Virus record (IMG/VR): IMGVR_UViG_3300025770_000870
Location: 1 to 64,000 of that record
Reading direction: 5' to 3' (one strand)
DNA length: 64,000 bases
Both the position numbers and the translations under genes were made by a program. The stretch's first letter is position 1; every line of letters begins with the position of its first letter. Shown one piece after another: positions 1 through 41,333 of this stretch. The notes beneath the pieces are model-generated. The model was not told where the DNA came from. It did not search any database and saw nothing but the letters and a program-made list of their open reading frames with translations.

Positions 1-112
1 CACCACCTTTTGTCTCTGTTCTAATCCTTCTATCTATATAGAAAATTCCTTCGTTGGTTTCCACTTTTACAGTTCCACCATCTCTATATACGTCTATGTT
101 ATTTATTATCAT
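1..112 (-). CDS. Array micro-gene, truncated by window edge
   Basis: ATG from the repeat at 110-112; MIINNIDVYRDGGTVKVETNEG... stays open to position 1. Confidence 0.7.
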   Translation of the reverse strand, partial: MIINNIDVYRDGGTVKVETNEGIFYIDRRIRTETKGG

Positions 113-234
113 CTTTGTTTTGGTTTATTGAATTTAGCAAAGTATTCGAATCCCTCTTTTATAGTCTTAAAAAACATTGGTTTATTGAATGGTCCTTTTT
201 TAGGTTTCTCAAATAACTTTTTATTTGCCTTCAT
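109..234 (-). CDS. Array micro-gene, 41 aa, basic
   Basis: Manual translation MKANKK...FNKPKQR*; starts and stops in junction repeats. Confidence 0.65.
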   Translation of the reverse strand: MKANKKLFEKPKKGPFNKPMFFKTIKEGFEYFAKFNKPKQR

Positions 235-400
235 CTTTGTTTTGTTCGTATTCATAAAATTCTTTAATAAAAACTACTACTTCATTGGGTACAGGTATCA
301 TGTCACCATAACTTGTCTGATGCTCCATAAGACCTCTTTCTAGTAGAGAAGATATCCAACCTGAATATTCTTCTGGTATATTTAACGTTAATTTACTCAT
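221..400 (-). CDS. Array micro-gene, 59 aa
   Basis: Manual translation MSKLTLNIPEEYSGW...EQNKDEGK*. Confidence 0.65.
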   Translation of the reverse strand: MSKLTLNIPEEYSGWISSLLERGLMEHQTSYGDMIPVPNEVVVFIKEFYEYEQNKDEGK

Positions 401-642
401 CTTCGTTTTGGTTTAAATTCAATGTACTTATTAAATTGTCTTTTATATTCATCCCACTCTTCACTTGTTGGTGGTGTTTCTCTATCTAACCAACTCTTAA
501 TATCAATCTCTAACTTTAATCTAAGGTTGTTTGTTGCTTTGTCTATTCCTATGTCAATCATCTTTGTTTTGGTTAATTTATTGTATCTTTCGGCAATATC
601 AGACATTACTTCTCCTATATGTTTTGGTTCTCTTTTATTCAT
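397..642 (-). CDS. Array micro-gene; apparent read-through fusion of two units
   Basis: ORF track. Internal repeat at 559 lacks one A and reads LTKTKM. Ends KPKRR. Confidence 0.7.
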   Translation of the reverse strand: MNKREPKHIGEVMSDIAERYNKLTKTKMIDIGIDKATNNLRLKLEIDIKSWLDRETPPTSEEWDEYKRQFNKYIEFKPKRR

Positions 643-779
643 CTTTCGTTTGGTTTAATTTTCTTAAACTTTGCCTTACCATCTTTATCATAACCAATAA
701 ACTTCACATCTGGTATTGTGAAACAAAACTCTTTTATTGGTATGTGTGGTACATATTTGTAACCTTCTTTGCTCATCAT
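639..779 (-). CDS. Array micro-gene, 46 aa
   Basis: Manual translation MMSKEGYKYVPHIP...KIKPNER*. Confidence 0.65.
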   Translation of the reverse strand: MMSKEGYKYVPHIPIKEFCFTIPDVKFIGYDKDGKAKFKKIKPNER

Positions 780-1036
780 CTTTGTTTTGGTTTAATTATA
801 GGATTCGGTTCTTCAAATAAACAGAAACGTTTACATTTCCCACCTTCCACATCGACCATATCAAACCATTGGGATAATGGTCGAGTGTAATAACTACCGA
901 ATTCTTGCGATTGATAGACTACTGTTATTTCGTCATTTACTGTGTTTTTAGCTAAGTGTAAAACTTCATAAGTTCCACCTTTATAGTGTTGGTAGATTCT
1001 ATTAAATTGTGGATATGTTTCTCTTTTATTTTTCAT
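776..1036 (-). CDS. DUF1653-family protein (array unit)
   Basis: YQHYKGGTYEVLHLA...VVYQ...YYTRPLSQW matches the DUF1653 pattern; ends KPKQR. Confidence 0.75.
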   Translation of the reverse strand: MKNKRETYPQFNRIYQHYKGGTYEVLHLAKNTVNDEITVVYQSQEFGSYYTRPLSQWFDMVDVEGGKCKRFCLFEEPNPIIKPKQR

Positions 1037-1172
1037 CTTTGTTTTGGTTTAGTATGTGTCTAATAAAGAAATTAACTCTGTCTTCAATATCTTTATCATT
1101 ATCTCTTGGTTTGAATTTCATTCCATTATCTTCAACCCATTCTTTAATATCACAGGCACATCTTTTATTTCT

Positions 1173-1430
1173 CTACTCATCTTGTTTTGGTTTAAATGTT
1201 TTTATTATTTCACCTCTCTTATCTCCTATACCCATTTGATAGTATTCATAACTTCTCGGTGGTTTTGAAAATACGTGTTCTTCATTAGATTCACAATACT
1301 CCCATTGAGGTCCATCAAAAGTCATATCCATCCAATTTGATATAATATACAAATCAGAGTTGCATATCGGACATTTATCACTTGATAACGTTTTTTCCTC
1401 GTAATGACTTAAATTATCTAACTTACTCAT
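1173..1430 (-). CDS. Array micro-gene with CPIC...C-x4-H putative zinc ribbon
   Basis: ORF track; bounded by repeats. Confidence 0.65.
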   Translation of the reverse strand: MSKLDNLSHYEEKTLSSDKCPICNSDLYIISNWMDMTFDGPQWEYCESNEEHVFSKPPRSYEYYQMGIGDKRGEIIKTFKPKQDE

Positions 1431-1545
1431 CTTTGTTTTGGTTTTTATGTTTAACTTTAGTAGTTCTTTTTGCCAAATATCTATTTAACCATTTATCAGA
1501 CCACCATTTACCCTTAAACTTTTTTATAATGTCTTTTTTACTCAT
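1423..1545 (-). CDS. Array micro-gene, 40 aa, very basic
   Basis: Manual translation MSKKDIIKKFKGKWW...KNQNKDE*. Confidence 0.6.
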   Translation of the reverse strand: MSKKDIIKKFKGKWWSDKWLNRYLAKRTTKVKHKNQNKDE

Positions 1546-1625
1546 CTTCTTTGTTTTGGTTTAATAGCCACATTAAAACGTGGATTAACATTATTTAAAA
1601 ACCATTGAAACGGTTTTTATTTTTG

Positions 1626-1853
1626 TTACCTACAATTAAAAGTTTTTACAACTGTTTTTTTTGGTGGTCTACTATTTGTTTTATCAATTTCAATTAACTT
1701 TTCTGCTTCCTCAATAGTTCTGTATGTATTTATAGGGTATCTTTTTTCATTTTGTATTTGAAACCAAAATGGATAATACCATAGTCGTTTTTGCACTTCA
1801 AAACCACCAAATTTATCTGTTACTATCCTGTATTGTGTTTTACATATTCTCAT
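1626..1853 (-). CDS. Hypothetical phage protein (array)
   Basis: ORF track; YRIV...FEVQKR..FW pattern typical of small phage proteins. Confidence 0.7.
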   Translation of the reverse strand: MRICKTQYRIVTDKFGGFEVQKRLWYYPFWFQIQNEKRYPINTYRTIEEAEKLIEIDKTNSRPPKKTVVKTFNCR

Positions 1854-1899
1854 TATTTCTATATTTTCTTTTACTCATCTTTGTTTTGGTTTAAATATG

Positions 1900-1992
1900 T
1901 TATTTTTGTCTAAATCCAATAACCGTTACAAATATGGCTATGTATATTAATACACAGAATTGTAAATAATCTATTACTTCTTTCTCATTCAT
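1900..1992 (-). CDS. Array micro-gene, 30 aa, single TM
   Basis: MNEKEVIDYLQFCVLIYIAIFVTVIGFRQK*. Confidence 0.55.
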   Translation of the reverse strand: MNEKEVIDYLQFCVLIYIAIFVTVIGFRQK

Positions 1993-2158
1993 CTTCTTTG
2001 TTTTGGTTTAAGAGATCTATTAATTTCTTATCTTTTTTGTTTGGAATGAATTCGTTATTTCTGAATTTGCGTAATTCGTTTCTTCCATACATTTCTAAAA
2101 TATATCCTTCTACTCTTATAACATTAAATTCTTTGTTTGTCTTTATTACTTTACTCAT
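1985..2158 (-). CDS. Array micro-gene, 57 aa
   Basis: Manual translation MSKVIKTNKEF...LNQNKEDE*. Confidence 0.6.
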   Translation of the reverse strand: MSKVIKTNKEFNVIRVEGYILEMYGRNELRKFRNNEFIPNKKDKKLIDLLNQNKEDE

Positions 2159-2170
2159 CTTTGTTTTGGT

Positions 2171-2365
2171 TTAATATCTTAATTTTATTTGGTCATAGTC
2201 AGTATCGTAATACTCACCATTATCTTCTTTGTGTTTTCTTATTAGTTGGTCAAGTAAGATTTCACAAAGTCCCACTTCTGAACAATCACCTTTATCCCAA
2301 CCCATATAATTCTGTTTGGTTATGGTATCACCCATGTCTAATAGTTCTTCTATCTTATCTATCAT
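2171..2365 (-). CDS. Array micro-gene, paralog of 3378..3587
   Basis: Shares MIDKIEELLDMGDTIT...KGDCSEVGLCEILLDQLIRKHKE...IKLRY. Confidence 0.8.
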   Translation of the reverse strand: MIDKIEELLDMGDTITKQNYMGWDKGDCSEVGLCEILLDQLIRKHKEDNGEYYDTDYDQIKLRY

Positions 2366-2571
2366 CGTTCTTTAATTAAATAATCTTTTAACCCTTCTAT
2401 CCAAGTTGGAATCATACTATAATATTGGTGTGACGAAGAACTAAATCTCATATTCCTATTATCTTCATAGTATTGATATTTATCTTTTAGTTCTTGTATT
2501 TTACTTTCAACATCTTCTACGGTTGAAACTTTTATCATACTCACTATTTCTTCCTTAATTAATGTATTCAT
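2362..2571 (-). CDS. Array micro-gene, hypothetical
   Basis: ORF track; ATGA overlap with the next gene. Confidence 0.7.
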   Translation of the reverse strand: MNTLIKEEIVSMIKVSTVEDVESKIQELKDKYQYYEDNRNMRFSSSSHQYYSMIPTWIEGLKDYLIKER

Positions 2572-2827
2572 CTTTGTCTAAATTATCTTGAATATATTCT
2601 CTTATCATTTTAGGTGTTATATTACAACCACCATGTTCAATTTCATATTCACCGAATCCAAGTTCACTAAATTCTACTCTCTTTATAATTTGTTTAGTGC
2701 TGGGGTTATATATTCTCACCTCTGCTTTTTTATCTATATCATGTTCTATGATATATTTCCATTCCACACCTTTTACATTTATATTTCTGAGTTTAAGCAC
2801 TTTAATTCTAAAATTCTTCCGTTTCAT
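2555..2827 (-). CDS. Array micro-gene, hypothetical
   Basis: ORF track. Confidence 0.7.
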   Translation of the reverse strand: MKRKNFRIKVLKLRNINVKGVEWKYIIEHDIDKKAEVRIYNPSTKQIIKRVEFSELGFGEYEIEHGGCNITPKMIREYIQDNLDKDEYIN

Positions 2828-2901
2828 CTCTTTCTAATTTTTCTTCTTTCTTGGGAGTTTAGGTCTTGGTTCCCACTTTATATAGATTATTCCTTCTTTA
2901 C

Positions 2902-3186
2902 TCATCTTTGTTTTGGTTTAACTACCCATTGGTCTCTTGTTTCTTCGTACCTAACATACGTTCCTATATCTGTGTTAGTTATCCAAACCTTTTTTCTAGG
3001 TGTTTCTTTATTTGGCGAAAATAATACTTTATGGAATTGATATACCTTTCCATTAGTTAATGATTCATGGTTTCCTATATACTTTTTATAGATATATGTT
3101 GGATTAGGGTTATCGTCTGATGTTACATATCTAACATGAGGAAACACGAATACTTCTTCTATATTTATTTTATCTTCTTTACTCAT
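2902..3186 (-). CDS. Array micro-gene, hypothetical
   Basis: ORF track; MSKEDKI...KPKQR, repeat to repeat. Confidence 0.75.
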   Translation of the reverse strand: MSKEDKINIEEVFVFPHVRYVTSDDNPNPTYIYKKYIGNHESLTNGKVYQFHKVLFSPNKETPRKKVWITNTDIGTYVRYEETRDQWVVKPKQR

Positions 3187-3365
3187 CTTTGTTTTGGTTT
3201 AATCCATCCATTATTAGATATAGCTATTTTTGCTCCCATCATAAATGCATTCAATGTTGGTATAGTAGGTTCTGCACCAACCAAATCACACCATTGTTCT
3301 GCTATTTCTTTTAGTTCTTTATCTGAACATATAGGAATTAGTGGTAAATAATCAGTTTTCTTCAT
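3183..3365 (-). CDS. Array micro-gene, hypothetical
   Basis: ORF track; ends KPKQR. Confidence 0.75.
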   Translation of the reverse strand: MKKTDYLPLIPICSDKELKEIAEQWCDLVGAEPTIPTLNAFMMGAKIAISNNGWIKPKQR

Positions 3366-3377
3366 CTTTGTTTTGGT

Positions 3378-3587
3378 TTAGTATCTTAATTTAATTTCAT
3401 CATAATCCCTATCATACCACTCTCCATTCTCTTCCTTATGTTTTCTTATCAATTGGTCTAATAGTATTTCACATAAGCCTACTTCTGAACAATCACCCTT
3501 ATTCCAAATGGAAAATTTCCGTTCAGCAGAACAAAGATCAGTTATGGTGTCACCCATGTCTAATAGTTCTTCTATCTTATCTATCAT
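3378..3587 (-). CDS. Array micro-gene, paralog of 2171..2365
   Basis: Near-identical protein; repeat to repeat. Confidence 0.8.
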   Translation of the reverse strand: MIDKIEELLDMGDTITDLCSAERKFSIWNKGDCSEVGLCEILLDQLIRKHKEENGEWYDRDYDEIKLRY

Positions 3588-3599
3588 CTTTGTTTTGGT

Positions 3600-3815
3600 T
3601 TAATCCTTAAATACGGGTGTATAATTTCTATATTTTTTTCTTAGTACATCATAAGACATATCCCAGCCATCTTCTCTGATAACCTTACTGTGTAATATCG
3701 GAGGATGAGAAGAACCTATTTTATCTTCAACCCATTTTAATCTTTTCTTTAGTTCTTGATTTTCATACTCAAGTAACCTTACTCTTTCTTTTAATTCTTT
3801 ATTAAAAATCATCAT
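3600..3815 (-). CDS. Array micro-gene with N-terminal coiled coil
   Basis: ORF track; LKERVRLLEYENQELKKRL. Confidence 0.7.
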   Translation of the reverse strand: MMIFNKELKERVRLLEYENQELKKRLKWVEDKIGSSHPPILHSKVIREDGWDMSYDVLRKKYRNYTPVFKD

Positions 3816-3833
3816 CTTTGTTTTGGTTTATAA

Positions 3834-3929
3834 TTACAGTGAAACTCCTAATGCAAAACCTATTACAAAACCAATACTAATCCCTATTGATAAAGCTACG
3901 TCCATATGTTTACTAGTATATTTACTCAT
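3834..3929 (-). CDS. Array micro-gene, 31 aa, TM with GxxxG repeats
   Basis: MSKYTSKHMDVALSIGISIGFVIGFALGVSL*. Confidence 0.6.
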   Translation of the reverse strand: MSKYTSKHMDVALSIGISIGFVIGFALGVSL

Positions 3930-4147
3930 CTTTGTTTTGGTTTAACATATTTAATGTCTTCCTCATCTTTAATATCCAATACCCATTCCATTAAATCAAT
4001 CATACTGCATTGTTGGTTGAATTGTTCTCTTTTTTCAGATATACCCCACAAACCTTTATATGGTGGATTATTTAAAAAATGAGCTAATTCATCCTTATGT
4101 TTATTCATTTCTATTAACTTGTTATATATTTCTTCTCTACTTCTCAT
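3926..4147 (-). CDS. Array micro-gene, hypothetical
   Basis: ORF track; ends KPKQR. Confidence 0.75.
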   Translation of the reverse strand: MRSREEIYNKLIEMNKHKDELAHFLNNPPYKGLWGISEKREQFNQQCSMIDLMEWVLDIKDEEDIKYVKPKQR

Positions 4148-4418
4148 CTTTATTTTGGTTTATTTTAATAGAATAAATACATAATTCTTTATCCAAAAAT
4201 TCATTCAACTTTTTTTCTATCTTTTCTCTGTCTTTAATAGTATTGTCAACTCCGTTGTTAAAACTTTCCCACATTATCAGTAAGGATTTTATTTCTTCTT
4301 TATTCATATCTTATTTATTTCATTCCACCATATAATCTTTGGTCTAATATACTGTTGATGATGACTCCATTTGGCTTTTATCCTTATTATGTCACTTTCT
4401 GTTTTACTCATCTTTGTT

Positions 4419-4586
4419 TTATTTGTTAAATGAATCTAGATATCTGTTAACTTCTTCTTGGTGATTCGGTCCGAAGAAATCATCATATAGCTTTCTTATC
4501 TCATTAATCTCTTTTTGTAACTTTGCTGCCAATTTAAAGTCTTCGTTCTCTATTGATACTTTAAGTTTTTCTAATAAAATATTCAT
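4419..4586 (-). CDS. Array micro-gene, 55 aa, UVR (UvrB/UvrC) motif-like
   Basis: LKVSIENEDFKLAAKLQKEI resembles the UVR consensus A-x-x-x-EDFE-x-AA-x-LRD-x-I. Confidence 0.55.
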   Translation of the reverse strand: MNILLEKLKVSIENEDFKLAAKLQKEINEIRKLYDDFFGPNHQEEVNRYLDSFNK

Positions 4587-4599
4587 CTTTGTTTTAGTT

Positions 4600-4731
4600 T
4601 TAATAAGCTAATTCTAAAGTAAACTTTAGAAAGTGAAAGCTAAAACATTTATATTCTACGTGTAAATTAAATGTTGGTATCAAATACCAATCATCTTTTG
4701 CCCACCATTCTATATTAATTTCTTTAATCAT
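4600..4731 (-). CDS. Array micro-gene, 43 aa
   Basis: MIKEINIEWWAKDDWYLIPTFNLH...LAY*. Confidence 0.6.
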   Translation of the reverse strand: MIKEINIEWWAKDDWYLIPTFNLHVEYKCFSFHFLKFTLELAY

Positions 4732-5010
4732 CTTTGTTTTGGTTTAAATTTGAGCTCTTCTTCTATTATCTTCACCATTTCATCAAAAGTAACACCCTTT
4801 TCGTCTGCCTGTTGTTTATTAAATCTACTATCACCAAATATAAATTTCTGCTTTATTATGACCCGTTTTATCTGTACCCATTTTTGACATCAATATTAAC
4901 TTTCCACCACCATCAAATGTAATGGTAATTTTATTGTTTTTTGGGCTAGTCTTAATATCCTTTATCGTTTTACCTGAATATTCACCTTCTTTAATCATCT
5001 TTGTTTTGGT

Positions 5011-5229
5011 TTAATCTAAATCTAATTCATTTTTCATAAATGCTTCCCATATCAGTTCACGTAATGCTGTTTCTTGTAATGGTTTTGTACCAGGTTTTGT
5101 ATCAAATGTAGGAAGTACATCAATATCCAATATGGTCTTCAAGTCATCACTGATAGTTACGTGGTATTCTACTCCTTCGTGTACTACTTCTAATATGAAT
5201 CTTGTGTGTATTTTATTTACTTTACTCAT
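5011..5229 (-). CDS. Array micro-gene, hypothetical
   Basis: ORF track; stop is the TAA of the repeat. Confidence 0.75.
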   Translation of the reverse strand: MSKVNKIHTRFILEVVHEGVEYHVTISDDLKTILDIDVLPTFDTKPGTKPLQETALRELIWEAFMKNELDLD

Positions 5230-5401
5230 TGTTGTTTTGGTTTATTAATTCTTCTTTGAATTCTTTCCAATATGTTTGTGTTGAACTATATTGTTTCTCT
5301 AAAATGGTATCATTTACAATTTGTAATGCTTTTTTAAAACCTTCCCTTTGTAACATTATTGAGACTTGGTTTTCCATTGGTGATAATTTTCTTTTACTCA
5401 T
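5222..5401 (-). CDS. Array micro-gene, 59 aa
   Basis: MSKRKLSPMENQ...INQNNNE*. Confidence 0.65.
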   Translation of the reverse strand: MSKRKLSPMENQVSIMLQREGFKKALQIVNDTILEKQYSSTQTYWKEFKEELINQNNNE

Positions 5402-5525
5402 CTTTGTTTTGGTTTTTTCTCATTTGTATTTGAAATATATTACCTAAACAGAATCCTATCATCACACAAAATATCCCAATTGATATTAGTTGGGGGAATG
5501 TATATAAATCTATTTCACTCATCAT
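5394..5525 (-). CDS. Array micro-gene, 43 aa, single TM
   Basis: MMSEIDLYTFPQLISIGIFCVMIGFCLGNIFQIQMRKNQNKDE*. Confidence 0.6.
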   Translation of the reverse strand: MMSEIDLYTFPQLISIGIFCVMIGFCLGNIFQIQMRKNQNKDE

Positions 5526-5541
5526 CTTTGTTTTAGTTTAA

Positions 5542-5907
5542 TTAATCCCACCATCCTTGGATATTATGTTCAATATACTTCCATAGTAATTGGTGAGCTC
5601 TTTCTTGTTTTTCAATTGCTTCCTTTATGGTAAGTTTTCCTTTATAAAAATCTTCCATATACTCTTCATCATATACTTTATCCATCAATCTAATTGCAGT
5701 ACGAATCTTTTGAGCATGTATATTAGAATCAACAGTATATGATTTATCTGACTCTAATAAATCAGCAGTACGTTCTAATTGATATCTGAATAGTTCTATT
5801 GCATGAACATAATCAAAATCATATCCTTTCCAAATAATAGGTAGGAAATCCCATACACGTTTTAAGCGTCTAAAGAACCATGTTATGTTATTATAAATCT
5901 TCTTCAT
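5542..5907 (-). CDS. Hypothetical phage protein
   Basis: ORF track; WDFLPIIWK..DFDY...GWWD terminus typical of phage hypotheticals. Confidence 0.8.
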   Translation of the reverse strand: MKKIYNNITWFFRRLKRVWDFLPIIWKGYDFDYVHAIELFRYQLERTADLLESDKSYTVDSNIHAQKIRTAIRLMDKVYDEEYMEDFYKGKLTIKEAIEKQERAHQLLWKYIEHNIQGWWD

Positions 5908-6146
5908 CTTTTATACTTTCTTATCAGTTTGAAAATTTCTGTTATATCAGTAAACTGTATTTCTTGTCCTTGTTTAATCGGTGTAAATGCTACTGTGAAT
6001 CCATGATTAGCTTGAAATGTCTCAGTAACACTTTTACCATTTATGCGTTCTATGTAAATCCAAGGGTAGTTACCACTAAGCTTTACTTCTACACCTATCT
6101 TTTGTAGTCTTCCTATAAATACTGTTATTTTATCTTCTTTAATCAT
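5904..6146 (-). CDS. First gene of the array, hypothetical
   Basis: ORF track; GNYPWIY. Confidence 0.75.
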   Translation of the reverse strand: MIKEDKITVFIGRLQKIGVEVKLSGNYPWIYIERINGKSVTETFQANHGFTVAFTPIKQGQEIQFTDITEIFKLIRKYKR

Positions 6147-6195
6147 CTTTGTTTTAATTTCAGTAGTATTTCTTATTAAAATTCATCAATATCCA

Positions 6196-6228
6196 TAAAT
6201 ATACGGATATTATATTGGTTATACAAAA
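6196..6228 (-). promoter_or_regulatory. Putative early promoter driving the micro-gene array (Bacteroidota sigma70-like)
   Basis: Minus strand TTTGTATAACCAATATAATATCCGTATATTTA: TTTG (-33) and a TAnnTTTG-like (-7) box. The same 20-mer core recurs at 9938-9957. Confidence 0.6.
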
Positions 6229-6285
6229 ATATGTGATTAATTCTGTATAGTTTCTCCTCATTTCATATTTTATATATATGAAAAG

Positions 6286-7392
6286 ATGATTTTAGAAAAA
6301 GTAAGATTCACCAAAACAGGTGACAAGGAATTTTATAAAGTACTCAGAAAGCGTGTTAACGCTTACTTTAAAGAAAAAGGTATTTCAAAATTTGCAAACG
6401 TAAACATGGTATTGAAAACTATATTTATGTTGGCTTTATACTTAACACCTTTCATACTAATACTCACAACACTTTCTTCTTCTTTATTAATTATATTGAT
6501 GTGGATGTTGATGGGGTTTGGAATGGCAGGAATTGGCCTTTCAATAATGCACGATGCTAATCACAGCGCATACTCGAAGAATAAACACGTTAATTTATTT
6601 ATGGGAAAACTGATTTGGTTAGTTGGTGGTAGTGATGTAAACTGGAGGATTCAACATAATGTTTTACACCACACTTATACAAATGTACATGGAATGGATG
6701 AAGACATTGAAATTGATCCATTAATGCGTTTTTCACCAAATCAAAAATTGAGAAAGGGTCATAAGTTTCAGTTTATTTATGCATGGTTCCTTTATGGCAT
6801 GATGACTATGATGTGGGCAACAACTAAAGATTATTCTCAATGGAAAAGATATAAGAATAAAGATTTAATTAAAACACAGGGGTTATCAAGTAAGAGTTTT
6901 CTTTGGACTTTAATTTCAACAAAAACTATTTATTTAATACTTACTCTTGGTCTACCATTACTTATAGGGTCAATGCCTTGGCACCAAACAGTATTATGTT
7001 TCTTATTAATGCACTTTATTGCTGGTGTAACATTAGCATCAATTTTCCAACCAGCACACGTTGTTCCTTCATCAGATTATTCAAAGCCTGATGAAAACGG
7101 AAATGTAGAAGTATCTTGGGCAGAAAACCAATTAATGAACACAACGAACTTCGCACCAAAAGCACGTTTATTTTCTTGGTATGTAGGTGGGTTAAACTAT
7201 CAAATAGAACACCACTTATTTCCAAATATTTGTCATGTTCATTACCGTAAGATTTCAAAAATTGTAAGAGATACTGCATTTGAATACGAACTACCTTATC
7301 ATTCCTATAAAACATTTTATGAGGCTCTATCAAACCATACAAAGATGCTTTATACTTTAGGAAGAGTTGAAGACGCTCCAGTAATACATTAA
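6286..7392 (+). CDS. Membrane fatty acid (acyl-CoA) desaturase
   Basis: Three His boxes HDANH, HNVLHH, QIEHHLFP; TM segments. Confidence 0.93.
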   Translation: MILEKVRFTKTGDKEFYKVLRKRVNAYFKEKGISKFANVNMVLKTIFMLALYLTPFILILTTLSSSLLIILMWMLMGFGMAGIGLSIMHDANHSAYSKNKHVNLFMGKLIWLVGGSDVNWRIQHNVLHHTYTNVHGMDEDIEIDPLMRFSPNQKLRKGHKFQFIYAWFLYGMMTMMWATTKDYSQWKRYKNKDLIKTQGLSSKSFLWTLISTKTIYLILTLGLPLLIGSMPWHQTVLCFLLMHFIAGVTLASIFQPAHVVPSSDYSKPDENGNVEVSWAENQLMNTTNFAPKARLFSWYVGGLNYQIEHHLFPNICHVHYRKISKIVRDTAFEYELPYHSYKTFYEALSNHTKMLYTLGRVEDAPVIH

Positions 7393-7403
7393 ATAAACAG
7401 CAT

Positions 7404-7435
7404 AAAAAAGGTGTTATCATTATAATAACACCTTT
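7404..7435. terminator. Intrinsic terminator between convergent genes
   Basis: Inverted repeat AAAGGTGTTAT-N7-ATAACACCTTT with flanking A run. Confidence 0.7.
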
Positions 7436-7450
7436 CATTAATTCAATAAG

Positions 7451-8131
7451 TTATTTCAAAAATTGAACATGAATAACAGATTCTCCCGTTAAAGGTTTTG
7501 TTGGTGGACAAGCGGCTAAAGCTTCATCATATTCTATTTGTGCAGCGACTTCGTCTGATTTTGCATCACTAGCATTCCCACTTGTTATAGCTTTTGCTGC
7601 TCCAGCTCCAGTTGCAGCGGATGCTGCTAAAGCATTTGCCGCTGATGCTGCTGTTAAGGCTGTAGTACAAGTTGCTAGTGTAGCTGACGCGGTCACAAGT
7701 GCAGCAGATGTAATAGCTTCGGCCGCTACCGCAATTGCTTCTGTATCGGTCGCTCCTGCAAGCCATAATGCTGCGGCTGCCGTTGCCGCTTCAGATGGTC
7801 CAAAATCCCAAAATGGAATCCAATTTGATGCGGCTGCCGCGGTTACAGCTACTCCAGCTGCCGCAACATCTGCAGTTGCTGCTGTAAGTGTTGCTGTAGC
7901 TGCCGTCTCAGCTGTTACTGCTAATGCTTGTGCGGTAACAGCTGCTACTTGTGCACTGCTCGCAACTGCATTTGCGCTTGCTGCTAGTGTAGCAGCCGCA
8001 GAAGCTGCGATGAGTGTATCATTGGCAATACTATCAGCCTTTGATGCACTAACTAATTTTGACTTTGCTACTGCTAAAGCTTGTGTAGCATCAACCAAAC
8101 GTTCTTGTGGTGTTCTTTTATCTCCTGTCAT
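7451..8131 (-). CDS. Ala-rich heptad-repeat helical hairpin protein
   Basis: Ala at every 7th residue from 15 to 99; central WIPFWDFGP hinge. Confidence 0.8.
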   Translation of the reverse strand: MTGDKRTPQERLVDATQALAVAKSKLVSASKADSIANDTLIAASAAATLAASANAVASSAQVAAVTAQALAVTAETAATATLTAATADVAAAGVAVTAAAASNWIPFWDFGPSEAATAAAALWLAGATDTEAIAVAAEAITSAALVTASATLATCTTALTAASAANALAASAATGAGAAKAITSGNASDAKSDEVAAQIEYDEALAACPPTKPLTGESVIHVQFLK

Positions 8132-8237
8132 ATTTTTTTTTATTTTTATATATCTAATTATATTGTTTTTGTTCTTTCTTTATATTTGATTGTAAAATGA
8201 TTCTTATTTTGAATGGTAGATTATAATATATAATCTA

Positions 8238-8759
8238 ATGAAATATCTAATGAAATATTTAAAGACATACGAATCTATGGTTGATGCTCCTTCTGGGTAT
8301 AAACATAAACCTAAACTATCAAGTCTTACCAAACAAGAGATTAAAGATATCTTAGTTAATTTCTCTGATTGGGATAACTGTGATATTAAAATAGATGAAC
8401 TTCACAATAATAAATGGGGTGATTATGTTAGAAGTGGTTATGAATTTAGATTCGATATTAATATATCATCTGTTATCAGATACGGAGAAGATCTTGGCCA
8501 TACCAATCCAATAGAATTAAACAATGATTTACTTGATGATTTAGTTAGACTATATTCTATATTCAAGGAAGATAAGTGGGATTGTGATATAACACTAACA
8601 ATTAAAGGAAATAATAAGAATTATAAAGAAACAGTTTACACTGTACCAACAGCAGGATATTCGATAAGTGAAGATGGTATTTATTATCAATATGATAAGA
8701 TAGACTTGGATAAGATACCACCAATTATGAATATCGAATTACAATTAATATCATATTAA
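8238..8759 (+). CDS. MKYLK-leader family protein
   Basis: MKYLMKYLKTYES; EIKDILVNFSD motif; TAATATATA at 8224. Confidence 0.8.
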   Translation: MKYLMKYLKTYESMVDAPSGYKHKPKLSSLTKQEIKDILVNFSDWDNCDIKIDELHNNKWGDYVRSGYEFRFDINISSVIRYGEDLGHTNPIELNNDLLDDLVRLYSIFKEDKWDCDITLTIKGNNKNYKETVYTVPTAGYSISEDGIYYQYDKIDLDKIPPIMNIELQLISY

Positions 8760-15370: not shown

Positions 15371-15808
15371 TTAATATCCTATTCTACTTCCACGAACAAT
15401 ATATGTAATTTCATTCATTACTCTACCTGCTATGATTGCATCATGTCTCTGTTCTATAACCTGATAAACGTGTGTGAAATTGTCATTGATATGTTGTTCT
15501 AATTGTTTCTTTATCTCGTTGTTATCAGATACGCTTGAGAAGTTTTTTCTTAATTCACCTATTCTCTGTAATGGTGCCTTTCTCATATAAACTTCATGTG
15601 AACTACCTTTATACTTAAAGTTTGGACTATGAACAATCTTATCATTCAAATCCAATTCATTCATTGGTATGTCATATCGCCAAGGTTTGTTAGTATCATC
15701 AATCTCTGATGTTTGTTCTTCTTTGAACTTATCCCATGCTCCTGACCATTTTGGATCTGACCACATAGATTGGTTTCCAAACTTATCTTTAATTATTTCA
15801 CTGTTCAT
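15371..15808 (-). CDS. Hypothetical, preceded by an exact junction repeat
   Basis: Exact 18-mer at 15806-15823. Confidence 0.75.
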   Translation of the reverse strand: MNSEIIKDKFGNQSMWSDPKWSGAWDKFKEEQTSEIDDTNKPWRYDIPMNELDLNDKIVHSPNFKYKGSSHEVYMRKAPLQRIGELRKNFSSVSDNNEIKKQLEQHINDNFTHVYQVIEQRHDAIIAGRVMNEITYIVRGSRIGY

Positions 15809-15835
15809 CTTTGTTTTGGTTTATAATATTATAGA

Positions 15836-16078
15836 TTAATAATCTTTCCATTGTATTTCACCTTTGTCGGCTTTAACAGTGTAAAACATATGATCTGGAT
15901 CTCCGTATTCATCTAACAAATCTGCATCCATAAACTCATCTTCTACCTCATCAATATTCTCATCAATATATTCTTTAACAAATGCTTCGACATCTTCTGT
16001 TCCATCAGGAATCTCCAGTTCAATCGTTCTATTGTCTGTGTACATAATTTGAGTACTTCTTGTTACTTTTATTTTCAT
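15836..16078 (-). CDS. Small acidic hypothetical protein
   Basis: ORF track. Confidence 0.75.
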   Translation of the reverse strand: MKIKVTRSTQIMYTDNRTIELEIPDGTEDVEAFVKEYIDENIDEVEDEFMDADLLDEYGDPDHMFYTVKADKGEIQWKDY

Positions 16079-16197
16079 AATACTTTATTATATTAGTTCT
16101 ATATAATATTCCATTAATAGTTGTGGATATCTAAATGTGATAAGAAATTATACCTAAAGAATTCTATGATGCTAAAGTACAAATAGTTGGTAAAAGA

Positions 16198-17721
16198 TTA
16201 GTAAAATCTTATTAATTTTTTAATACTTCCATCTGAATATTGCTCAATAATAATACCTATATAATCATCATTAACTTCTTGTCCTAATAGATTAATAGAT
16301 CTAATCAATTCATTATCAATGTTAGTAGCATTGTATTGGATATCTGTAATTGTGTTTTTTAGTATAATATTAAACCTATGGTTATACCCTATGATATTAT
16401 TAATGAATGTATATGTTGGGTTTATTCCTGAATCATAAACAATACCAGTTAATATATCTTGGTAAAATACAGATTGTCCATTGAAATTAAGTTGACCAGA
16501 ACCTTTAACATACAAAGATGTTGTGTCTTTATCCTTTATAGTGTTTATGGAATATATATTAGTATCTATTTTTGTGTAAAGTTTTGATGATTGTGTGATA
16601 AATTTATGTGCGTCATAAGTATAATCATAAAAATTAGTAGAACCTGTATCTACAACAAATGCTATTTCATCTGAATTTAATGTTATTTTAGTAACTTTTG
16701 ATGTACCTAACCTTTTTAATTGGCTATTATCATTTACTATAACTTTTGATTTTGATTTCAGAGATGGGTTACTGATAATTGATTTAACCCAAAATGCTTG
16801 ACCAGATGATATAAACTCACTACCACCATTAACACCTACCCCGTTAATATAACTGGTGTAGTTTTTTGTACAAACGTCAAGTACCCAAATAGCATCTTCT
16901 ATATTTCTTTTCTTCCAGCCCTTTGCGTCCCAATTAATTGTACCTAACCAAGGATTTGAAACCATGTTCCAACCATTATTAACACTACTATCTAAACCAG
17001 AATATGTTATATTGTAATTAAAGTTTTCGGTTAAATCTGTTATACCAATAAGTTCAATAACTCTTGCGTCATTAGTTACTGATGAAGAAGAATCAAATAA
17101 AAAGAATCCTTGTCCCCTGTTGAGTATATCATTCACATTATTAGGAACAACCCACCCAATGTTTAAATCAACATCAGGTATTGTTTCGTCATAGAAATAG
17201 GTATTTACCCAAAATGTTGGCCAAGAAGTACCAGGAAAACCAGTGTGTATGAATCCTAAATCAACTAATGGGTTGTTAAATGGACTCCCATACATACCCC
17301 ATCCATCACATCGACTTATCCATTTCTGCCAAATTATATCACCGGTTATTGTTTTATTTTTTTTACACTTACCAATCCTTCCATTATTAATGGAATCATT
17401 TACTAACGTAAGTGGGGTATTTAAGATTAAATGATTTCCTATCTCAAGAACTCCGGTTACGTATAATGAATCATTACAAGTTGTTATCCCTTTTATGGTG
17501 ATATCATTTATAGTATCAATAATATCGAGTGTTACAAAATGTAGTATGATTACATTATCTCCTGTCGATGGTACACCTATATCCCAAGTAGTTGGGTCCG
17601 ACCAGACACCATTATTAATGGATGTTACTGTATTTTGTGATTTTAAAACTGGTGTTGATAATAATATTAATAATGTTGTTATCCAAAACAAGTGTTTGTT
17701 CAAAAATAAAAAATATTTCAT
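16198..17721 (-). CDS. Secreted Bacteroidota-type surface protein with T9SS-like C-terminus
   Basis: Signal peptide; GVWSDPTTW, GWNMVSNPW, GQAFWV; terminal INLLGQEV...YSDGSIKK. Confidence 0.7.
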   Translation of the reverse strand: MKYFLFLNKHLFWITTLLILLSTPVLKSQNTVTSINNGVWSDPTTWDIGVPSTGDNVIILHFVTLDIIDTINDITIKGITTCNDSLYVTGVLEIGNHLILNTPLTLVNDSINNGRIGKCKKNKTITGDIIWQKWISRCDGWGMYGSPFNNPLVDLGFIHTGFPGTSWPTFWVNTYFYDETIPDVDLNIGWVVPNNVNDILNRGQGFFLFDSSSSVTNDARVIELIGITDLTENFNYNITYSGLDSSVNNGWNMVSNPWLGTINWDAKGWKKRNIEDAIWVLDVCTKNYTSYINGVGVNGGSEFISSGQAFWVKSIISNPSLKSKSKVIVNDNSQLKRLGTSKVTKITLNSDEIAFVVDTGSTNFYDYTYDAHKFITQSSKLYTKIDTNIYSINTIKDKDTTSLYVKGSGQLNFNGQSVFYQDILTGIVYDSGINPTYTFINNIIGYNHRFNIILKNTITDIQYNATNIDNELIRSINLLGQEVNDDYIGIIIEQYSDGSIKKLIRFY

Positions 17722-22113: not shown

Positions 22114-22137
22114 TATATATTAATAATATAATATATA
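22114..22137. promoter_or_regulatory. Back-to-back TAATATATA putative late promoters
   Basis: TATATATTA (22114-22122) and TAATATATA (22129-22137) between divergent leader-family operons. Confidence 0.6.
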
Positions 22138-22141
22138 AACT

Positions 22142-22870
22142 ATGAAGTATTTAAGAACCTTTGAGGGGCATGACTTACCAAAACATTTCTGGGATGATTT
22201 AGGGATAGGTGGTCGTGGATATAGTACTAAGCCAAGTAGAGAAGAACAGAAAGAGATTAAAAAAAGAAAGATGATTTATGGTGTTAATAACCTAAGTGAT
22301 TGTAAAGAGTGTGGTGCTAGAAGTATATACCCAAAGAAACATAATTGTGATGGGGAGGATGAAGGAACTGGATACTTGGGATATTCATCTGATAAGGATG
22401 CGATAGTCCTTGGGGAGGATGAAGATTTACCATTAGAGTCAATGAAGTATTTAAGAACGTTTAATGAATCTATGGCAAGAGAAGATGTTATTGATTTAAT
22501 GTATGAGATATCTGATTTAGGATATAAATGTTCTGTGGATACTAAATGGAGTGGTGATGGTGAATCAACTGATCCTGGTCAAGACCAATGGGTATCTAAT
22601 CAAAACTATATACAATTACTATTAGTTGGTAGACCAATGGGTGATGAGGGTTATGATAAAGTAAAGTATTCTGAAATACTTCCTACTATAAATAGAATCG
22701 AATCTTTCTTAAAGGCAGAAGGCTATGAAATGGATGATATAACTGTTAGTAGTATAAATGGTACAGGTTGGGATAATATAACATTAAAGGAACTTAATGA
22801 TTATGTAGAAGATGGTACACTTGATATAGGATGGTATCAACATCGCTTTTTATTCAATAAAGTTAAATAA
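22142..22870 (+). CDS. MKYLK-leader protein with a second internal leader
   Basis: MKYLRTFEG at the start; in-frame MKYLRTFNES at 22442; CKECG. Confidence 0.8.
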   Translation: MKYLRTFEGHDLPKHFWDDLGIGGRGYSTKPSREEQKEIKKRKMIYGVNNLSDCKECGARSIYPKKHNCDGEDEGTGYLGYSSDKDAIVLGEDEDLPLESMKYLRTFNESMAREDVIDLMYEISDLGYKCSVDTKWSGDGESTDPGQDQWVSNQNYIQLLLVGRPMGDEGYDKVKYSEILPTINRIESFLKAEGYEMDDITVSSINGTGWDNITLKELNDYVEDGTLDIGWYQHRFLFNKVK

Positions 22871-26255: not shown

Positions 26256-26265
26256 TTACACTTGT

Positions 26266-27924: not shown

Positions 27925-27938
27925 AGTATATGTTTTAG

Positions 27939-28943
27939 TTAGTTTCTATAGGAAAAGACTGTTTCAACCATTTCCCTTTCAAAATAATTTACCAAATTAG
28001 AGAAAAATTCTATATGTTCTTCTATAATAATTTTGGAGTATTGTTTTTTTGTTAATAGGTCATTAATAGGAACCCATTTAATTTCTTCTACATCATCCGA
28101 TGCTTTAGCGTGACCCCATTGTTTCTTATATAAGAATAGTGTACTAAATATTTCACTATCTTCGTTTTTATGTCTCCAATCTTTAATTTTACCGCTACAA
28201 ATATAAACACCATCAGTAGATATACCTACTTGTAAGTTTCCTCCGGTTTCCTCCCTTAGTTCCCTAAGACCAGCAGATTCATAATCTTTATCAGTAACAT
28301 CAACGTGTCCACCAATAAATCTGAATTTATCTTCTAAAGGTTTCCTCCCTAATAATATTGTATTATTTGTTTTATCCCAAACGACAACATCTACACAAGG
28401 CATTATTACAGGGTATCTTCCGAAGTTAGCGTAAACAACACCTTTTCTAAAATCTTCTGTGTGTCCTACTTCTCTAGCTACTTCTTCTCTTATCGAACTA
28501 CCAGAAATTTTATCTTGGTCATTATTGCCAATAAGTTCTACTGTTTTATATTTACCCTTATAAAATGGGATAAATGAATCTCTAGCACCATATAATAGTG
28601 TAGTTCTGTTTCCGAAAGGTTCTTGTATTTTACCATCTAAGATGGTTGACCAAGTCTCGTTGTTACGTTGGTCTCTGATTGGAAGTATTGTTACGTCAGG
28701 ATATTCTTGTTGTATCATTGATTTCCTTGTTGCGAAATCCAATGGGTTTCTTTTAGTTTGCTCCACAACTGGAACTCCTAAAAATATAATAACTTTTTTA
28801 TGATTTGCACAAACCGTATCAATTAAATGTTTATGAACATCGTGTAGCTTTGGTAATTGCATTCTAGCCACCAATACACCAACTTCAAAATCAGAAACAT
28901 TAATAACACTCGGTATGTTTAATTCTATCTTTTCTACCATCAT
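27939..28943 (-). CDS. nadM: Bifunctional NMN adenylyltransferase / Nudix ADP-ribose pyrophosphatase (NadM-Nudix, NatV-like)
   Basis: ARMQ...HDVH, RNPLDF..R, SGSSIRE; Nudix box GGHVD...RELREETG. Confidence 0.88.
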   Translation of the reverse strand: MMVEKIELNIPSVINVSDFEVGVLVARMQLPKLHDVHKHLIDTVCANHKKVIIFLGVPVVEQTKRNPLDFATRKSMIQQEYPDVTILPIRDQRNNETWSTILDGKIQEPFGNRTTLLYGARDSFIPFYKGKYKTVELIGNNDQDKISGSSIREEVAREVGHTEDFRKGVVYANFGRYPVIMPCVDVVVWDKTNNTILLGRKPLEDKFRFIGGHVDVTDKDYESAGLRELREETGGNLQVGISTDGVYICSGKIKDWRHKNEDSEIFSTLFLYKKQWGHAKASDDVEEIKWVPINDLLTKKQYSKIIIEEHIEFFSNLVNYFEREMVETVFSYRN

Positions 28944-28960
28944 TTAAATTTAATTTATAA

Positions 28961-28992
28961 TACAAATATAGTTATTTTTTAACTAATTAACC
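28961..28992 (-). promoter_or_regulatory. Bacteroidota sigma70-type promoter of the NAD operon
   Basis: Minus strand TATATTTG -7 box about 20 nt upstream of the start. Confidence 0.55.
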
Positions 28993-41299: not shown

Positions 41300-41333
41300 A
41301 TATTATATATTAAAAATAGTTAATATATAATAT

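What the first reader, a model, noticed from the sequence alone, without database searches (positions are those of the whole stretch)
110..5540. The junction is a three-frame stop plus restart adaptor
Seen: TAAACCAAAACAAAGATGAGTAA has a stop in every frame. Frame 0 is TAA (genes 2171, 3378, 3600, 5011). Frame +1 is AAA CCA AAA CAA AGA TGA, giving the C-terminus KPKQR* (109, 776, 2902, 3183, 3926; KPKRR at 397). Frame +2 is AAC CAA AAC AAA GAT GAG TAA, giving NQNKDE* (1423, 5394; NQNNNE at 5222). All three are actually used, and the ATG AGT AAA extension explains the many MSK starts. Established: Bacteroidota initiation uses no SD and favours A at -3, -6, -12 and -13; the repeat has A at all four. 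Inference: any DNA placed between two repeats is translated, terminated whatever its frame, and coupled to the next unit, which would favour gene capture or de novo gene birth.
Basis: partly seen in the sequence, partly recalled or inferred. Interest (0 to 1): 0.88.

Follow-up and report, generated by a model that had tools for sequence, protein, structure and literature searches.

The report
Phage gene-junction repeat: stop plus restart
A 24-base sequence sits at almost every boundary in a row of about 30 tiny genes of an uncultured giant phage, ending the upstream gene in any reading frame and starting the next. The same sequence marks gene boundaries in dozens of other uncultured phage contigs, so it looks like a phage-private start signal and a seam for swapping genes.

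Summary
On the minus strand of window 1-6146, about 25 of 34 small co-oriented ORFs start at TAAACCAAAACAAAG-ATG-AGTAA (23 copies, 0 expected). Upstream genes end at the TAA at -15, at ATGA, or at ATGAGTAA, which produces the KPKQR and NQNKDE tails.

The window is the end of a 242-kb IMG/VR phage contig with no Shine-Dalgarno sites, probably infecting Bacteroidota. The motif is not private to this genome:
- At least 78 other viral stretches carry two or more copies, and all three stop frames are used there (58/60/93).
- It is almost absent from 596 Gbp of bacterial genomes and was not found in cultured phages.
- Homologues of the same protein carry the +1 tail, the +2 tail or no tail, so the tails come from the junction.
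- Cassettes occur in different orders in different contigs, and homology blocks end at the motif about ten times more often than chance.
- Cassette families are under purifying selection.

Best reading: a phage-specific start-associated sequence, that is a Kozak-like, SD-free initiation site fused to three-frame stops. It serves internal cistrons of a long early transcript and also acts as a recombination seam. The translation and coupling roles, gene capture and de novo birth remain untested. It is a new variant of known kinds (mycobacteriophage SAS, T4 PeSL).

The parts
1..6146 (-). Array of 34 small co-oriented ORFs (12-121 aa), cut by the contig end at position 1. About 25 of them start at the junction motif.
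   Evidence: No terminator-like hairpin on the sense strand and no excess of promoter-like sites.
6224..6231 (-). TATTTTTG, a match to the Bacteroidota -7 promoter element TAnnTTTG, about 80 nt upstream of the first array gene. Candidate promoter of a polycistronic transcript.
   Evidence: Consensus taken from PMC6847099. Inference only.
6139..6161 (-). Degenerate junction (3 mismatches) before the first array gene, 5904-6146.
5518..5540 (-). Junction with 1 mismatch. The upstream gene stops 4 nt before the motif.
5394..5416 (-). Junction. The upstream gene ends in frame +2 at ATGAGTAA (tail NQNKDE).
5222..5244 (-). Junction with 2 mismatches. The upstream gene ends in frame +2 (tail NQNNNE).
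4991..5013 (-). Junction. The upstream gene ends at the frame-0 TAA (-15).
4724..4746 (-). Canonical junction preceded by about 100 nt with no long ORF, possibly a decayed cassette.
   Evidence: HSPs to L037, L015 and L044 cover 4708-4816.
4579..4601 (-). Junction variant (2 mismatches). The upstream stop is at -16.
4404..4426 (-). Degenerate junction (4 mismatches).
4140..4162 (-). Junction with 1 mismatch. The upstream gene is in frame +2 and runs to a stop at +8 (tail NQNKDEK).
3922..3944 (-). Junction. The upstream gene ends in frame +1 at ATGA (tail KPKQR).
3808..3830 (-). Canonical junction. The upstream stop is at -21.
3580..3602 (-). Junction. The upstream gene ends at the frame-0 TAA.
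3358..3380 (-). Junction. The upstream gene ends at the frame-0 TAA.
3179..3201 (-). Junction. The upstream gene ends in frame +1 (tail KPKQR).
2898..2920 (-). Junction. The upstream 94-aa gene ends in frame +1 (tail KPKQR). Its homologues carry other tails or none.
2171..2827 (-). Three-gene block without the motif, joined by ordinary overlaps (ATGA and others). The copy at 2171-2365 is a paralogue of 3378-3587, which does have the motif upstream.
   Evidence: D8, D13
2151..2173 (-). Junction. The upstream gene ends at the frame-0 TAA.
1985..2010 (-). +3 variant of the junction (…CAAAG-AAG-ATG). The upstream gene ends in frame +2 (tail NQNKEDE).
1840..1893 (-). Canonical junction that opens only a 12-codon ORF. 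That ORF overlaps the start of gene 1626-1853, which has no motif of its own and has a homologue in Nonlabens phage P12024L.
1538..1563 (-). +3 variant of the junction before gene 1423-1545.
1423..1445 (-). Junction. The upstream gene ends in frame +2 (tail NQNKDE).
1173..1194 (-). Junction copy with a 1-nt deletion. The upstream gene therefore ends …KPKQDE.
1029..1051 (-). Junction. The upstream gene is in frame +2 with its stop at +8 (tail NQNKDEK).
772..794 (-). Junction. The upstream DUF1653 gene ends in frame +1 (tail KPKQR).
635..657 (-). Junction with 2 mismatches. The upstream gene ends in frame +1 (tail KPNER).
554..576 (-). Junction copy whose frame-0 TAA reads TTA. Two units are fused into one 81-aa ORF (397-642), with the motif read as …LTKTKM….
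393..415 (-). Junction with 1 mismatch. The upstream gene ends in frame +1 (tail KPKRR).
227..249 (-). Degenerate junction. The upstream gene is in frame +2 with its stop at +11 (tail QNKDEGK).
105..127 (-). Junction. The upstream gene ends in frame +1 (tail KPKQR). The downstream ORF is cut by the contig end.
15351..15373 (-). Junction copy outside the array, before an 86-aa gene.
15801..15823 (-). Junction copy outside the array, before a 145-aa gene.

Best explanation
Window 1-6146 (minus strand) is the end of an early-type region of small genes in an uncultured jumbo phage. The phage lacks Shine-Dalgarno sites and probably infects Bacteroidota. Nearly every gene boundary is one conserved unit, (T)TAAACCAAAACAAAG-ATG-A(G/n)TAAA.

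I read this unit as a phage-specific start-associated sequence with three parts:
- An unstructured, A-rich, Kozak-like initiation site. It has A at -3, -6, -12 and -13, and the Cs keep A-runs to 4 or fewer.
- A start codon.
- A stop in each of the three frames within 23 nt.

On a long polycistronic transcript this lets each cistron end, and the next begin, within about 20 nt, whatever the upstream frame. The restart could be termination-reinitiation or fresh internal initiation. The KPKQR and NQNKDE tails are harmless read-through of the motif.

Because the same 24-30 nt lies at every boundary in many phages, it is also where homology between genomes starts and ends. Cassettes are therefore exchanged and reordered by recombination at the junction.

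Shown: the anatomy, the frame usage, that the tails come from the junction, that the motif is specific to phages, and that cassettes are mosaic. Inferred: the translation role, the coupling, the polycistronic early transcript and the recombination mechanism.
For: - Repeat is real and strand-specific: 23 copies against 0 expected.
- Position relative to ATG is fixed. Of 133 copies in other loci that were not selected through the ATG-containing search pattern, 74 have ATG directly after the core, 40 have it at +3 and 2 at another offset. The +3 variant keeps all frame relations.
- 93% of 306 copies in other loci open ORFs of at least 25 codons, median 59.
- Stop usage is 58 / 60 / 93 for frames 0 / +1 / +2. 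In the window it is 4 / 7 / 5, plus 3 with later stops.
- The stops are conserved whether or not they are used.
- Tails vary within protein families.
- A at -3, -6, -12 and -13 matches the experimentally shown determinants (PMC6847099).
- Predicted unpaired probability peaks at 0.77 over -10..-1, against a mean of 0.54.
- Only 1 of 89 other genes in the window has an SD-like tetramer. In the other motif-bearing loci the figure is 7%.
- The array has no sense-strand terminator. A host-type -7 box lies at its head.
- Larger genes led by the motif are ThyA, DnaB, a PD-(D/E)XK nuclease and a C5 methylase. None is structural.
- Cassette mosaicism: families occur in different orders. Two cassettes 2.9 kb apart in the window are adjacent in L012, with HSP ends inside the motifs.
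- Across loci, both ends of an HSP fall in a motif in 26% of cases against 2.7% in the null.
- Enrichment: at least 120 IMG/VR stretches, 78 with two or more copies. Same-composition controls gave 25 and 60 stretches that were nearly all single-copy.
Against: - No expression data of any kind.
- Host genomes do not use this sequence. The 19-mer occurs in only 25 stretches of 596 Gbp, so the ribosome does not need these exact bases.
- The other 89 genes of the same phage start without it, and C is rare upstream of them (3-12%). The invariant C at -11, -10 and -5 and G at -1 are not explained by an A-rich rule. They hint at a specific reader, whether protein, RNA or polymerase.
- Three-frame stops in one consensus are only a 3-8% event by chance.
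- HSP ends at gene boundaries are expected for any whole-gene exchange, so recombination at the motif itself is not proven.
Confidence: 0.6

Rival explanations
1. The motif is mainly a recognition site on early mRNAs for a phage-encoded factor. Candidates are a RegA-like translational repressor, a RegB-like endoribonuclease, or a phage ribosomal protein (bS21 or bS1) that gives phage messages priority. The start and stop anatomy would be secondary.
For: - Exact conservation of non-A positions across many phages, while cassette coding sequence diverges (dS 0.4-1.5).
- The motif is phage-specific and absent from hosts.
- Only one gene class in this phage uses it.
- Huge phages predicted on Bacteroidetes encode S1, S21 and initiation factors, proposed to favour phage mRNAs (PMC7162821).
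- The same suggestion was made for mycobacteriophage SAS (PMC3203893).
Against: No candidate factor was identified. A quick pattern scan found no S21-like ORF in the 64-kb window, though 178 kb of the contig was not seen. This reading is compatible with the best explanation rather than exclusive of it.
Confidence: 0.2
2. The motif is a promoter or initiator for a phage RNA polymerase or sigma-like factor. Each cassette would then be its own near-leaderless transcript.
For: - T4-type hyperplastic regions give each small ORF its own early promoter (PeSL; PMC2839356, PMC4122927).
- The same window has a second start class, AATATATA-N3-7-ATG, that looks like a promoter abutting the ATG.
- Jumbo phages often carry their own RNA polymerases (established knowledge).
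Against: - There is no match to the host -33/-7 consensus and no conservation upstream of -16.
- Spacing to the ATG is 0 or +3 only, which preserves frame. That makes sense for coding frames, not for a promoter.
- The motif extends into codons 2-3.
- No RNA polymerase was recognised in the window.
Confidence: 0.1
3. One reading: the repeat is an adaptor whose selected function is to capture foreign DNA or give birth to new genes by translating whatever lies between two copies.
For: - 227 families from 327 motif-led ORFs, most of them singletons.
- A canonical motif at 1871-1893 opens only a 12-codon ORF. That ORF overlaps the start of gene 1626-1853, whose homologue is a stand-alone, motif-less gene in cultured Nonlabens phage P12024L. 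This looks like a captured gene.
- Frame changes among orthologues are tolerated.
Against: - Cassette families with relatives are under purifying selection: median dN/dS 0.26, with 35 of 40 below 0.5.
- Some are known domains (DUF1653).
- No case of non-coding DNA turned into an ORF was found.
- Selection for evolvability is hard to separate from a by-product of a shared start signal.
Confidence: 0.12
4. The array is an integron-like or other site-specific recombination cassette array, with the repeat as the recombination site.
For: Promoterless, co-oriented small cassettes are separated by a repeat, and cassettes are shuffled between genomes.
Against: The repeat is 17-24 nt with no dyad symmetry or hairpin, unlike attC. 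It is welded to the ATG. No Rfam family matches. No integrase was seen among the proteins scanned, although this was not an exhaustive search.
Confidence: 0.03

Closest known systems
Start-Associated Sequences (SAS) of Cluster K mycobacteriophages (Pope et al. 2011, PMC3203893)
   Same: Both are short asymmetric repeats in one orientation, immediately upstream of ATG starts of non-structural genes. Both are found next to unrelated gene families, sometimes contain the upstream stop codon, and are absent from the host genome. A translation role is suspected for both, and the function is untested.
   Different: SAS is a 13-bp G+C-rich sequence with a Shine-Dalgarno core, 3-8 bp from the start, 11-19 copies per genome, confined to one phage cluster. 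The motif here has no SD. It is contiguous with the ATG and runs into codons 2-3. It has stops in all three frames that are all used. It reaches about 25 copies in 6 kb and is shared by dozens of divergent uncultured contigs.
PeSL (promoter-early stem-loop) cassettes of T4-type phages (Arbiol 2010, PMC2839356; Comeau 2014, PMC4122927)
   Same: Both are conserved short units flanking small ORFan genes in plastic early regions. In both, homology between genomes begins and ends at the unit, which has been proposed to mediate modular shuffling by recombination.
   Different: PeSL is a transcription unit boundary made of a sigma-70 early promoter plus a terminator hairpin. The motif here has no hairpin and no host promoter consensus. 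It is a stop/start junction inside coding sequence.
Kozak-like A-rich initiation regions of Flavobacterium johnsoniae (Baez et al. 2019, PMC6847099)
   Same: Neither uses an SD. Both have A at -3, -6, -12 and -13, low secondary structure and an AUG start.
   Different: Host initiation regions are a loose preference, not a fixed word. The 19-mer is essentially absent from 596 Gbp of bacterial and archaeal genomes. The invariant Cs and G-1 are not part of the host rule.
Overlapping stop/start translational coupling (ATGA, TAATG) in bacterial and phage operons
   Same: The frame +1 junction is a classic ATGA overlap. The stop-to-start distances of -15, +1 and +5 are all short enough for reinitiation.
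   Different: Ordinary overlaps serve one frame and have no conserved 15-nt context. This junction serves all three frames.
Integron attC cassette arrays
   Same: Both are arrays of promoterless, co-oriented, exchangeable small cassettes separated by a repeat.
   Different: No attC-type imperfect inverted repeat is present and no integrase was seen. The repeat here carries the start codon.

Membership tests
Mycobacteriophage SAS | Short asymmetric repeat, nearly always in one orientation | tested here: met
   33 minus-strand hits against 1 plus-strand hit. In every other locus the copies are on one strand.
Mycobacteriophage SAS | Lies within a few nt upstream of predicted start codons, mostly ATG | tested here: met
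   ATG follows at +0 or +3 in 86% of copies not selected through the ATG-containing pattern.
Mycobacteriophage SAS | Restricted to non-structural genes | tested here: inconclusive
   Larger motif-led genes are ThyA, DnaB, a nuclease and a methylase, with no structural hits among 37 scanned. Most cassettes have no annotation.
Mycobacteriophage SAS | Absent or nearly absent from host genomes | tested here: met
   25 stretches in 596 Gbp, mostly single copies in MAGs.
Mycobacteriophage SAS | Consensus GGGATAGGAGCCC with an SD core; Cluster K lineage | tested here: not met
   The sequence is different and has no SD (direct reading). This is therefore an analogue, not a member.
T4-type PeSL | Contains a host early (sigma-70-type) promoter | tested here: not met
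   No -33/-7 Bacteroidota consensus in the motif and no conservation upstream of -16. Sigma-70-like sites are not enriched.
T4-type PeSL | Contains a stem-loop (terminator) | tested here: not met
   No local inverted repeat at the junctions and no sense-strand terminator-like site.
T4-type PeSL | Marks the breakpoints of indels and replacements between related genomes | tested here: met
   HSP ends fall in the motif zone: start 57%, end 40%, both 26%, against 15%, 15% and 2.7% in the null.
Translational coupling junction | Stop of the upstream cistron overlaps or lies within a few nt of the downstream start | tested here: met
   Offsets of -15, +1 and +5 dominate.
Translational coupling junction | Downstream translation depends on upstream translation | not testable with these tools
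   Needs bicistronic reporters or ribosome profiling.
Bacteroidota Kozak-like initiation region | No SD; A at -3, -6, -12 and -13; low structure | tested here: met
   Direct reading; PMC6847099; accessibility profile.
Bacteroidota Kozak-like initiation region | Enhances initiation by host ribosomes | not testable with these tools
   Needs reporter or toeprint assays.
Integron cassette array | attC site: imperfect inverted repeats that fold into a hairpin | tested here: not met
   No dyad symmetry and no Rfam hit.
Integron cassette array | Adjacent tyrosine-recombinase integrase | not tested
   Only 20 larger proteins of the window were scanned, and none was an integrase. The array runs off the contig end.

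The most novel reading that the evidence does not exclude
The junction is a phage-private ribosome-recruitment code for SD-blind Bacteroidota. In this reading, a specific reader recognises the fixed word AAACCAAAACAAAG-AUG. This would give early phage cistrons priority over host mRNAs. The three-frame stops and the shared word would at the same time make it a universal plug, letting a large pool of small genes circulate among otherwise unrelated phages.
Probability: 0.2. Interest if true: 0.85.

Novelty: new variant of a known kind. Interest (0 to 1): 0.62.

Why it matters
How Bacteroidota ribosomes choose start sites without Shine-Dalgarno pairing is still open. Only loose A-rich preferences are known.

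This finding offers a fixed 15-nt word welded to the ATG. It is conserved across dozens of uncultured phage contigs, absent from bacteria, and used for only one class of genes. That gives a sharp, mutable test object for reporter, toeprint and cryo-EM work in F. johnsoniae.

It could also serve as a compact, frame-independent intercistronic part for building operons in Bacteroidota. It gives a simple sequence tag for finding the plastic early regions of an uncultured phage group. Finally, it extends the idea that conserved regulatory junctions are the seams of phage mosaicism, from T4-type PeSLs and mycobacteriophage SAS to SD-less hosts.

Tried and rejected
- **DNA similarity of the array to cultured and deposited phages:** no match. 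A 38-nt junction query gave only chance hits, so no isolate carrying the motif was found.
- **The 634,780-bp uncultured phage LR745206.1:** it shares NAMPT at 91% amino-acid identity (83% nucleotide identity across the NAMPT-NUDIX block). The 200 kb I read has no motif copy, and I did not fetch the remaining 435 kb.
- **PHROG and Pfam scans:** 18 of the 20 larger window proteins had no informative hit. Of 10 cassettes, 3 hit PHROGs of unknown function. Of a partly overlapping set of 10, one hit Pfam DUF1653.
- **Rfam:** nothing at the junctions.
- **Hairpins or dyad symmetry at the repeat:** none. This rejects attC-like and PeSL-like structure.
- **Host promoter consensus inside the motif:** absent.
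- **Contig-specific motif variants, as a sign of concerted evolution or co-evolving readers:** not seen. Every array has the same consensus, although the loci were selected through the exact word.
- **S21-like ORF in the window:** none by a crude pattern scan.
- **Literature search for the motif string:** no paper. A broader keyword search for a described Bacteroidota-phage start motif found nothing relevant.
- **Complementarity of the motif to host 16S rRNA:** could not be tested because no host rRNA was at hand.

Full report
**What is there**

The window is the first 64 kb of the 241,918-bp IMG/VR contig IMGVR_UViG_3300025770_000870. Locus L100 equals window 1-6529 and L066 equals window 15677-17457.

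Several results point to an uncultured jumbo phage of a Bacteroidota host:
- G+C is about 29%.
- The window encodes NAMPT, a NUDIX hydrolase, adenylosuccinate synthetase, a fatty-acid desaturase, a tRNA-Arg, and a CUB-domain protein with a type-IX-secretion sorting tail.
- Most proteins have no Pfam or PHROG match.
- Only 1 of 89 genes outside the array has an SD-like tetramer upstream.
- NAMPT is 91% identical to that of a 634,780-bp uncultured phage, LR745206.1. Genomes of that size were predicted to infect Bacteroidetes (PMC7162821). Linking that record to the paper is my inference.
- One cassette has a 57%-identical homologue in a cultured Flavobacteriaceae phage.

**The observation**

On the minus strand of 1-6146 lie 34 small co-oriented ORFs of 12-121 aa.
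- The 23-mer TAAACCAAAACAAAGATGAGTAA occurs 23 times with up to 3 mismatches, against 0 in shuffles.
- The 16-mer core gives 33 hits on the minus strand and 1 on the plus strand.
The frame-0 TAA at -15 ends 4 genes. ATGA ends 7 (tails KPKQR, KPKRR, KPNER). ATGAGTAA or its +3 variant ends 5 (NQNKDE, NQNNNE, NQNKEDE, KPKQDE). Three more run a few codons further. Six stop before the motif.
- A at -3, -6, -12 and -13 is there by direct reading and matches the determinants shown experimentally in F. johnsoniae (PMC6847099).
- Stops in all three frames within 23 nt are seen in 1-2% of random 23-mers of this genome, 2.6% of motif shuffles with ATG fixed, and 8% of i.i.d. flanks. This is unusual, but as a single consensus it is not overwhelming by itself.

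**It is not a private repeat of this genome**

- The exact 17-mer occurs in at least 120 stretches of IMG/VR. The contigs range from 4 to 380 kb.
- 78 stretches carry two or more copies and 29 carry five or more.
- Two same-composition control words gave 25 and 60 stretches. Nearly all were single-copy, and none had three or more.
- In 596 Gbp of bacterial and archaeal genomes the 19-mer occurs in only 25 stretches, mostly single copies in MAGs.
- No deposited phage genome matched the array DNA, and a 38-nt junction query gave only chance hits.
- The motif-bearing loci have 27-44% G+C, and only 7% of their long ORFs have SD-like tetramers upstream.

**Anatomy across phages**

- In 306 copies from 118 other stretches, 93% open an ORF of at least 25 codons, with a median of 59.
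- Conservation covers T-15 through A+9 and is nil upstream of -16.
- To avoid circularity I searched the core without the ATG. Of 133 copies not selected through the ATG-containing pattern, 74 have ATG directly after the core, 40 have it three bases later (mostly an added AAG) and 2 have another offset. The +3 form preserves all frame relations and gives the tails KPKQRR and NQNKEDE.
- Upstream genes end at the frame 0, +1 and +2 stops 58, 60 and 93 times.
- The stops are kept even when unused. TAA at -15 is present in about 80% of copies whose upstream gene is in another frame, A+4 in 95-100%, and a stop at +6..+8 in 52-67% in every frame class.

**The tails are by-products of the junction**

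- The 94-aa protein of window 2902-3186 has 14 relatives with full-length alignments and a conserved core ending …QW. After the core they carry KPKQR, KPKQRR, NQNKDE, unrelated short ends or nothing.
- The DUF1653 cassette (776-1036) has relatives that lack the tail.
- In the locus set, one family ends …INLLTKRIKYD where no motif follows and …INLLNQNKEDE where it does. Another ends in three different ways according to frame.

**The cassettes are real genes and are shuffled**

- 327 motif-led ORFs fall into 227 families, most of them singletons.
- The 40 families with informative pairs have a median dN/dS of 0.26, and 35 of 40 are below 0.5.
- Shared families occur in different orders in different contigs.
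- Two window cassettes 2.9 kb apart (229-419 and 3183-3375) are adjacent in the 380-kb contig of L012, at 92% and 89% identity, with alignment ends inside the motifs.
- Over all locus pairs, alignments of 100-700 nt start in a motif zone in 57% of cases, end there in 40%, and do both in 26%. Random placement gives 15%, 15% and 2.7%.
- Any whole-gene exchange would end near gene boundaries, so this fits recombination at the seam but does not prove it.

**Which genes use it**

- Larger motif-led genes are thymidylate synthase, DnaB-like helicase, PD-(D/E)XK nuclease, C5 methylase and similar. None is structural.
- In this window the other 89 genes do not use the motif. Many instead have AATATATA 3-7 nt before the ATG.
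- C is rare upstream of those genes, at 3-12%. The invariant Cs of the motif are therefore not explained by A-richness alone.

**Transcription context**

- The array has no sense-strand terminator-like hairpin and no excess of promoter-like sites.
- A match to the Bacteroidota -7 box lies about 80 nt upstream of its first gene.
- Predicted accessibility peaks over -10..-1, at 0.77 against a mean of 0.54.
- There is no hairpin at the repeat and no Rfam family.

**Interpretation**

The best-supported reading is a phage-specific start-associated sequence. It is an SD-free, Kozak-like initiation site fused to stops in all three frames. It serves internal cistrons of a long early transcript, and its shared identity also makes it the seam at which cassettes recombine.

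Shown: the anatomy, the frame usage, the origin of the tails, the phage specificity, the association with one gene class, and the mosaicism. Inferred: the initiation and coupling function, the single transcript, and recombination at the motif.

Rivals:
- A site for a phage-encoded regulator or ribosomal protein. This is compatible with the best reading and would explain the exact conservation and the absence from hosts.
- A phage-polymerase promoter that makes leaderless messages. The frame-preserving spacing and the extension into codons 2-3 argue against it.
There is one suggestive case at 1840-1893 with 1626-1853. The families are nevertheless under constraint, and no de novo case was seen.
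- An integron-like site, rejected on structure.

**Comparison with what is known**

It works like the Start-Associated Sequences of Cluster K mycobacteriophages (PMC3203893) and like T4-type PeSLs (PMC2839356, PMC4122927), but it is a member of neither. It has no SD core, no promoter and no hairpin. It is welded to the ATG, carries three used stops, and is shared by many divergent contigs. I found no paper that holds the motif string and none that describes such a motif in Bacteroidota phages. I file it as a new variant of a known kind.

Noticed in passing
window 8225-63785, e.g. 8225-8242, 22130-22146, 41295-41338: A second class of gene starts: AATATATA, then 3-7 nt, then ATGAA. There are 12 copies against 0.36 expected. 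Many of these genes begin MKYL(K/R)xF(N/E)E although the proteins are otherwise unrelated. This may be a late-type promoter abutting the start. From memory, the shared N-terminus recalls the capsid-targeting sequences of T4 internal proteins.
   Followed up: partly
window 2171-2365 and 3378-3587: A paralogous cassette pair at 81-95% nucleotide identity. One copy has the motif upstream. The other is joined to its neighbour by a plain ATGA overlap, and identity breaks right at the start codon.
   Followed up: partly
window 554-576 (inside ORF 397-642): A junction copy whose TAA has become TTA. Two units are fused into one 81-aa ORF and the motif is read as …LTKTKM….
   Followed up: no
window 1840-1893 and 1626-1853: A canonical motif opens only a 12-codon ORF that overlaps the start of the next gene. 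That gene has a 57%-identical, motif-less homologue (gp07) in cultured Nonlabens phage P12024L, and weaker ones next to primase genes of enterobacterial podophages.
   Followed up: partly
window 2568-2794: 227 nt are 97.8% identical to L044, from a 103-kb contig. The segment lies inside a gene of the motif-less block, with ends that are not at motifs. This looks like a recent exchange of another kind.
   Followed up: no
window 26265-28979: The NAMPT-NUDIX pair is 83% identical at DNA level to the 634,780-bp uncultured phage LR745206.1, while the rest of the window barely matches the 200 kb of that genome examined. This suggests a transferred metabolic module.
   Followed up: partly
loci L009, L014, L026, L033, L040, L044, L074, L091, L100, L120: Motif arrays lie at or near contig ends in roughly 10 of 23 contigs of 30 kb or more, by a hand count from the locus table. 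Either assemblies break in these variable arrays or the arrays sit near genome termini.
   Followed up: no
window 61551-63146: A 531-aa protein with a CUB domain and a type-IX-secretion C-terminal sorting domain, encoded by the phage. It serves as a clue to a Bacteroidota host.
   Followed up: no
L146 (Tara Oceans contig, 24.5% G+C), 5281-8134: A related small-gene array uses looser versions of the junction (…AAACCAAAAAGAAG-ATGAGTAAA, …AAACCAAACCG-ATGAGTAAA) with one canonical copy. The motif therefore grades into a wider family.
   Followed up: partly
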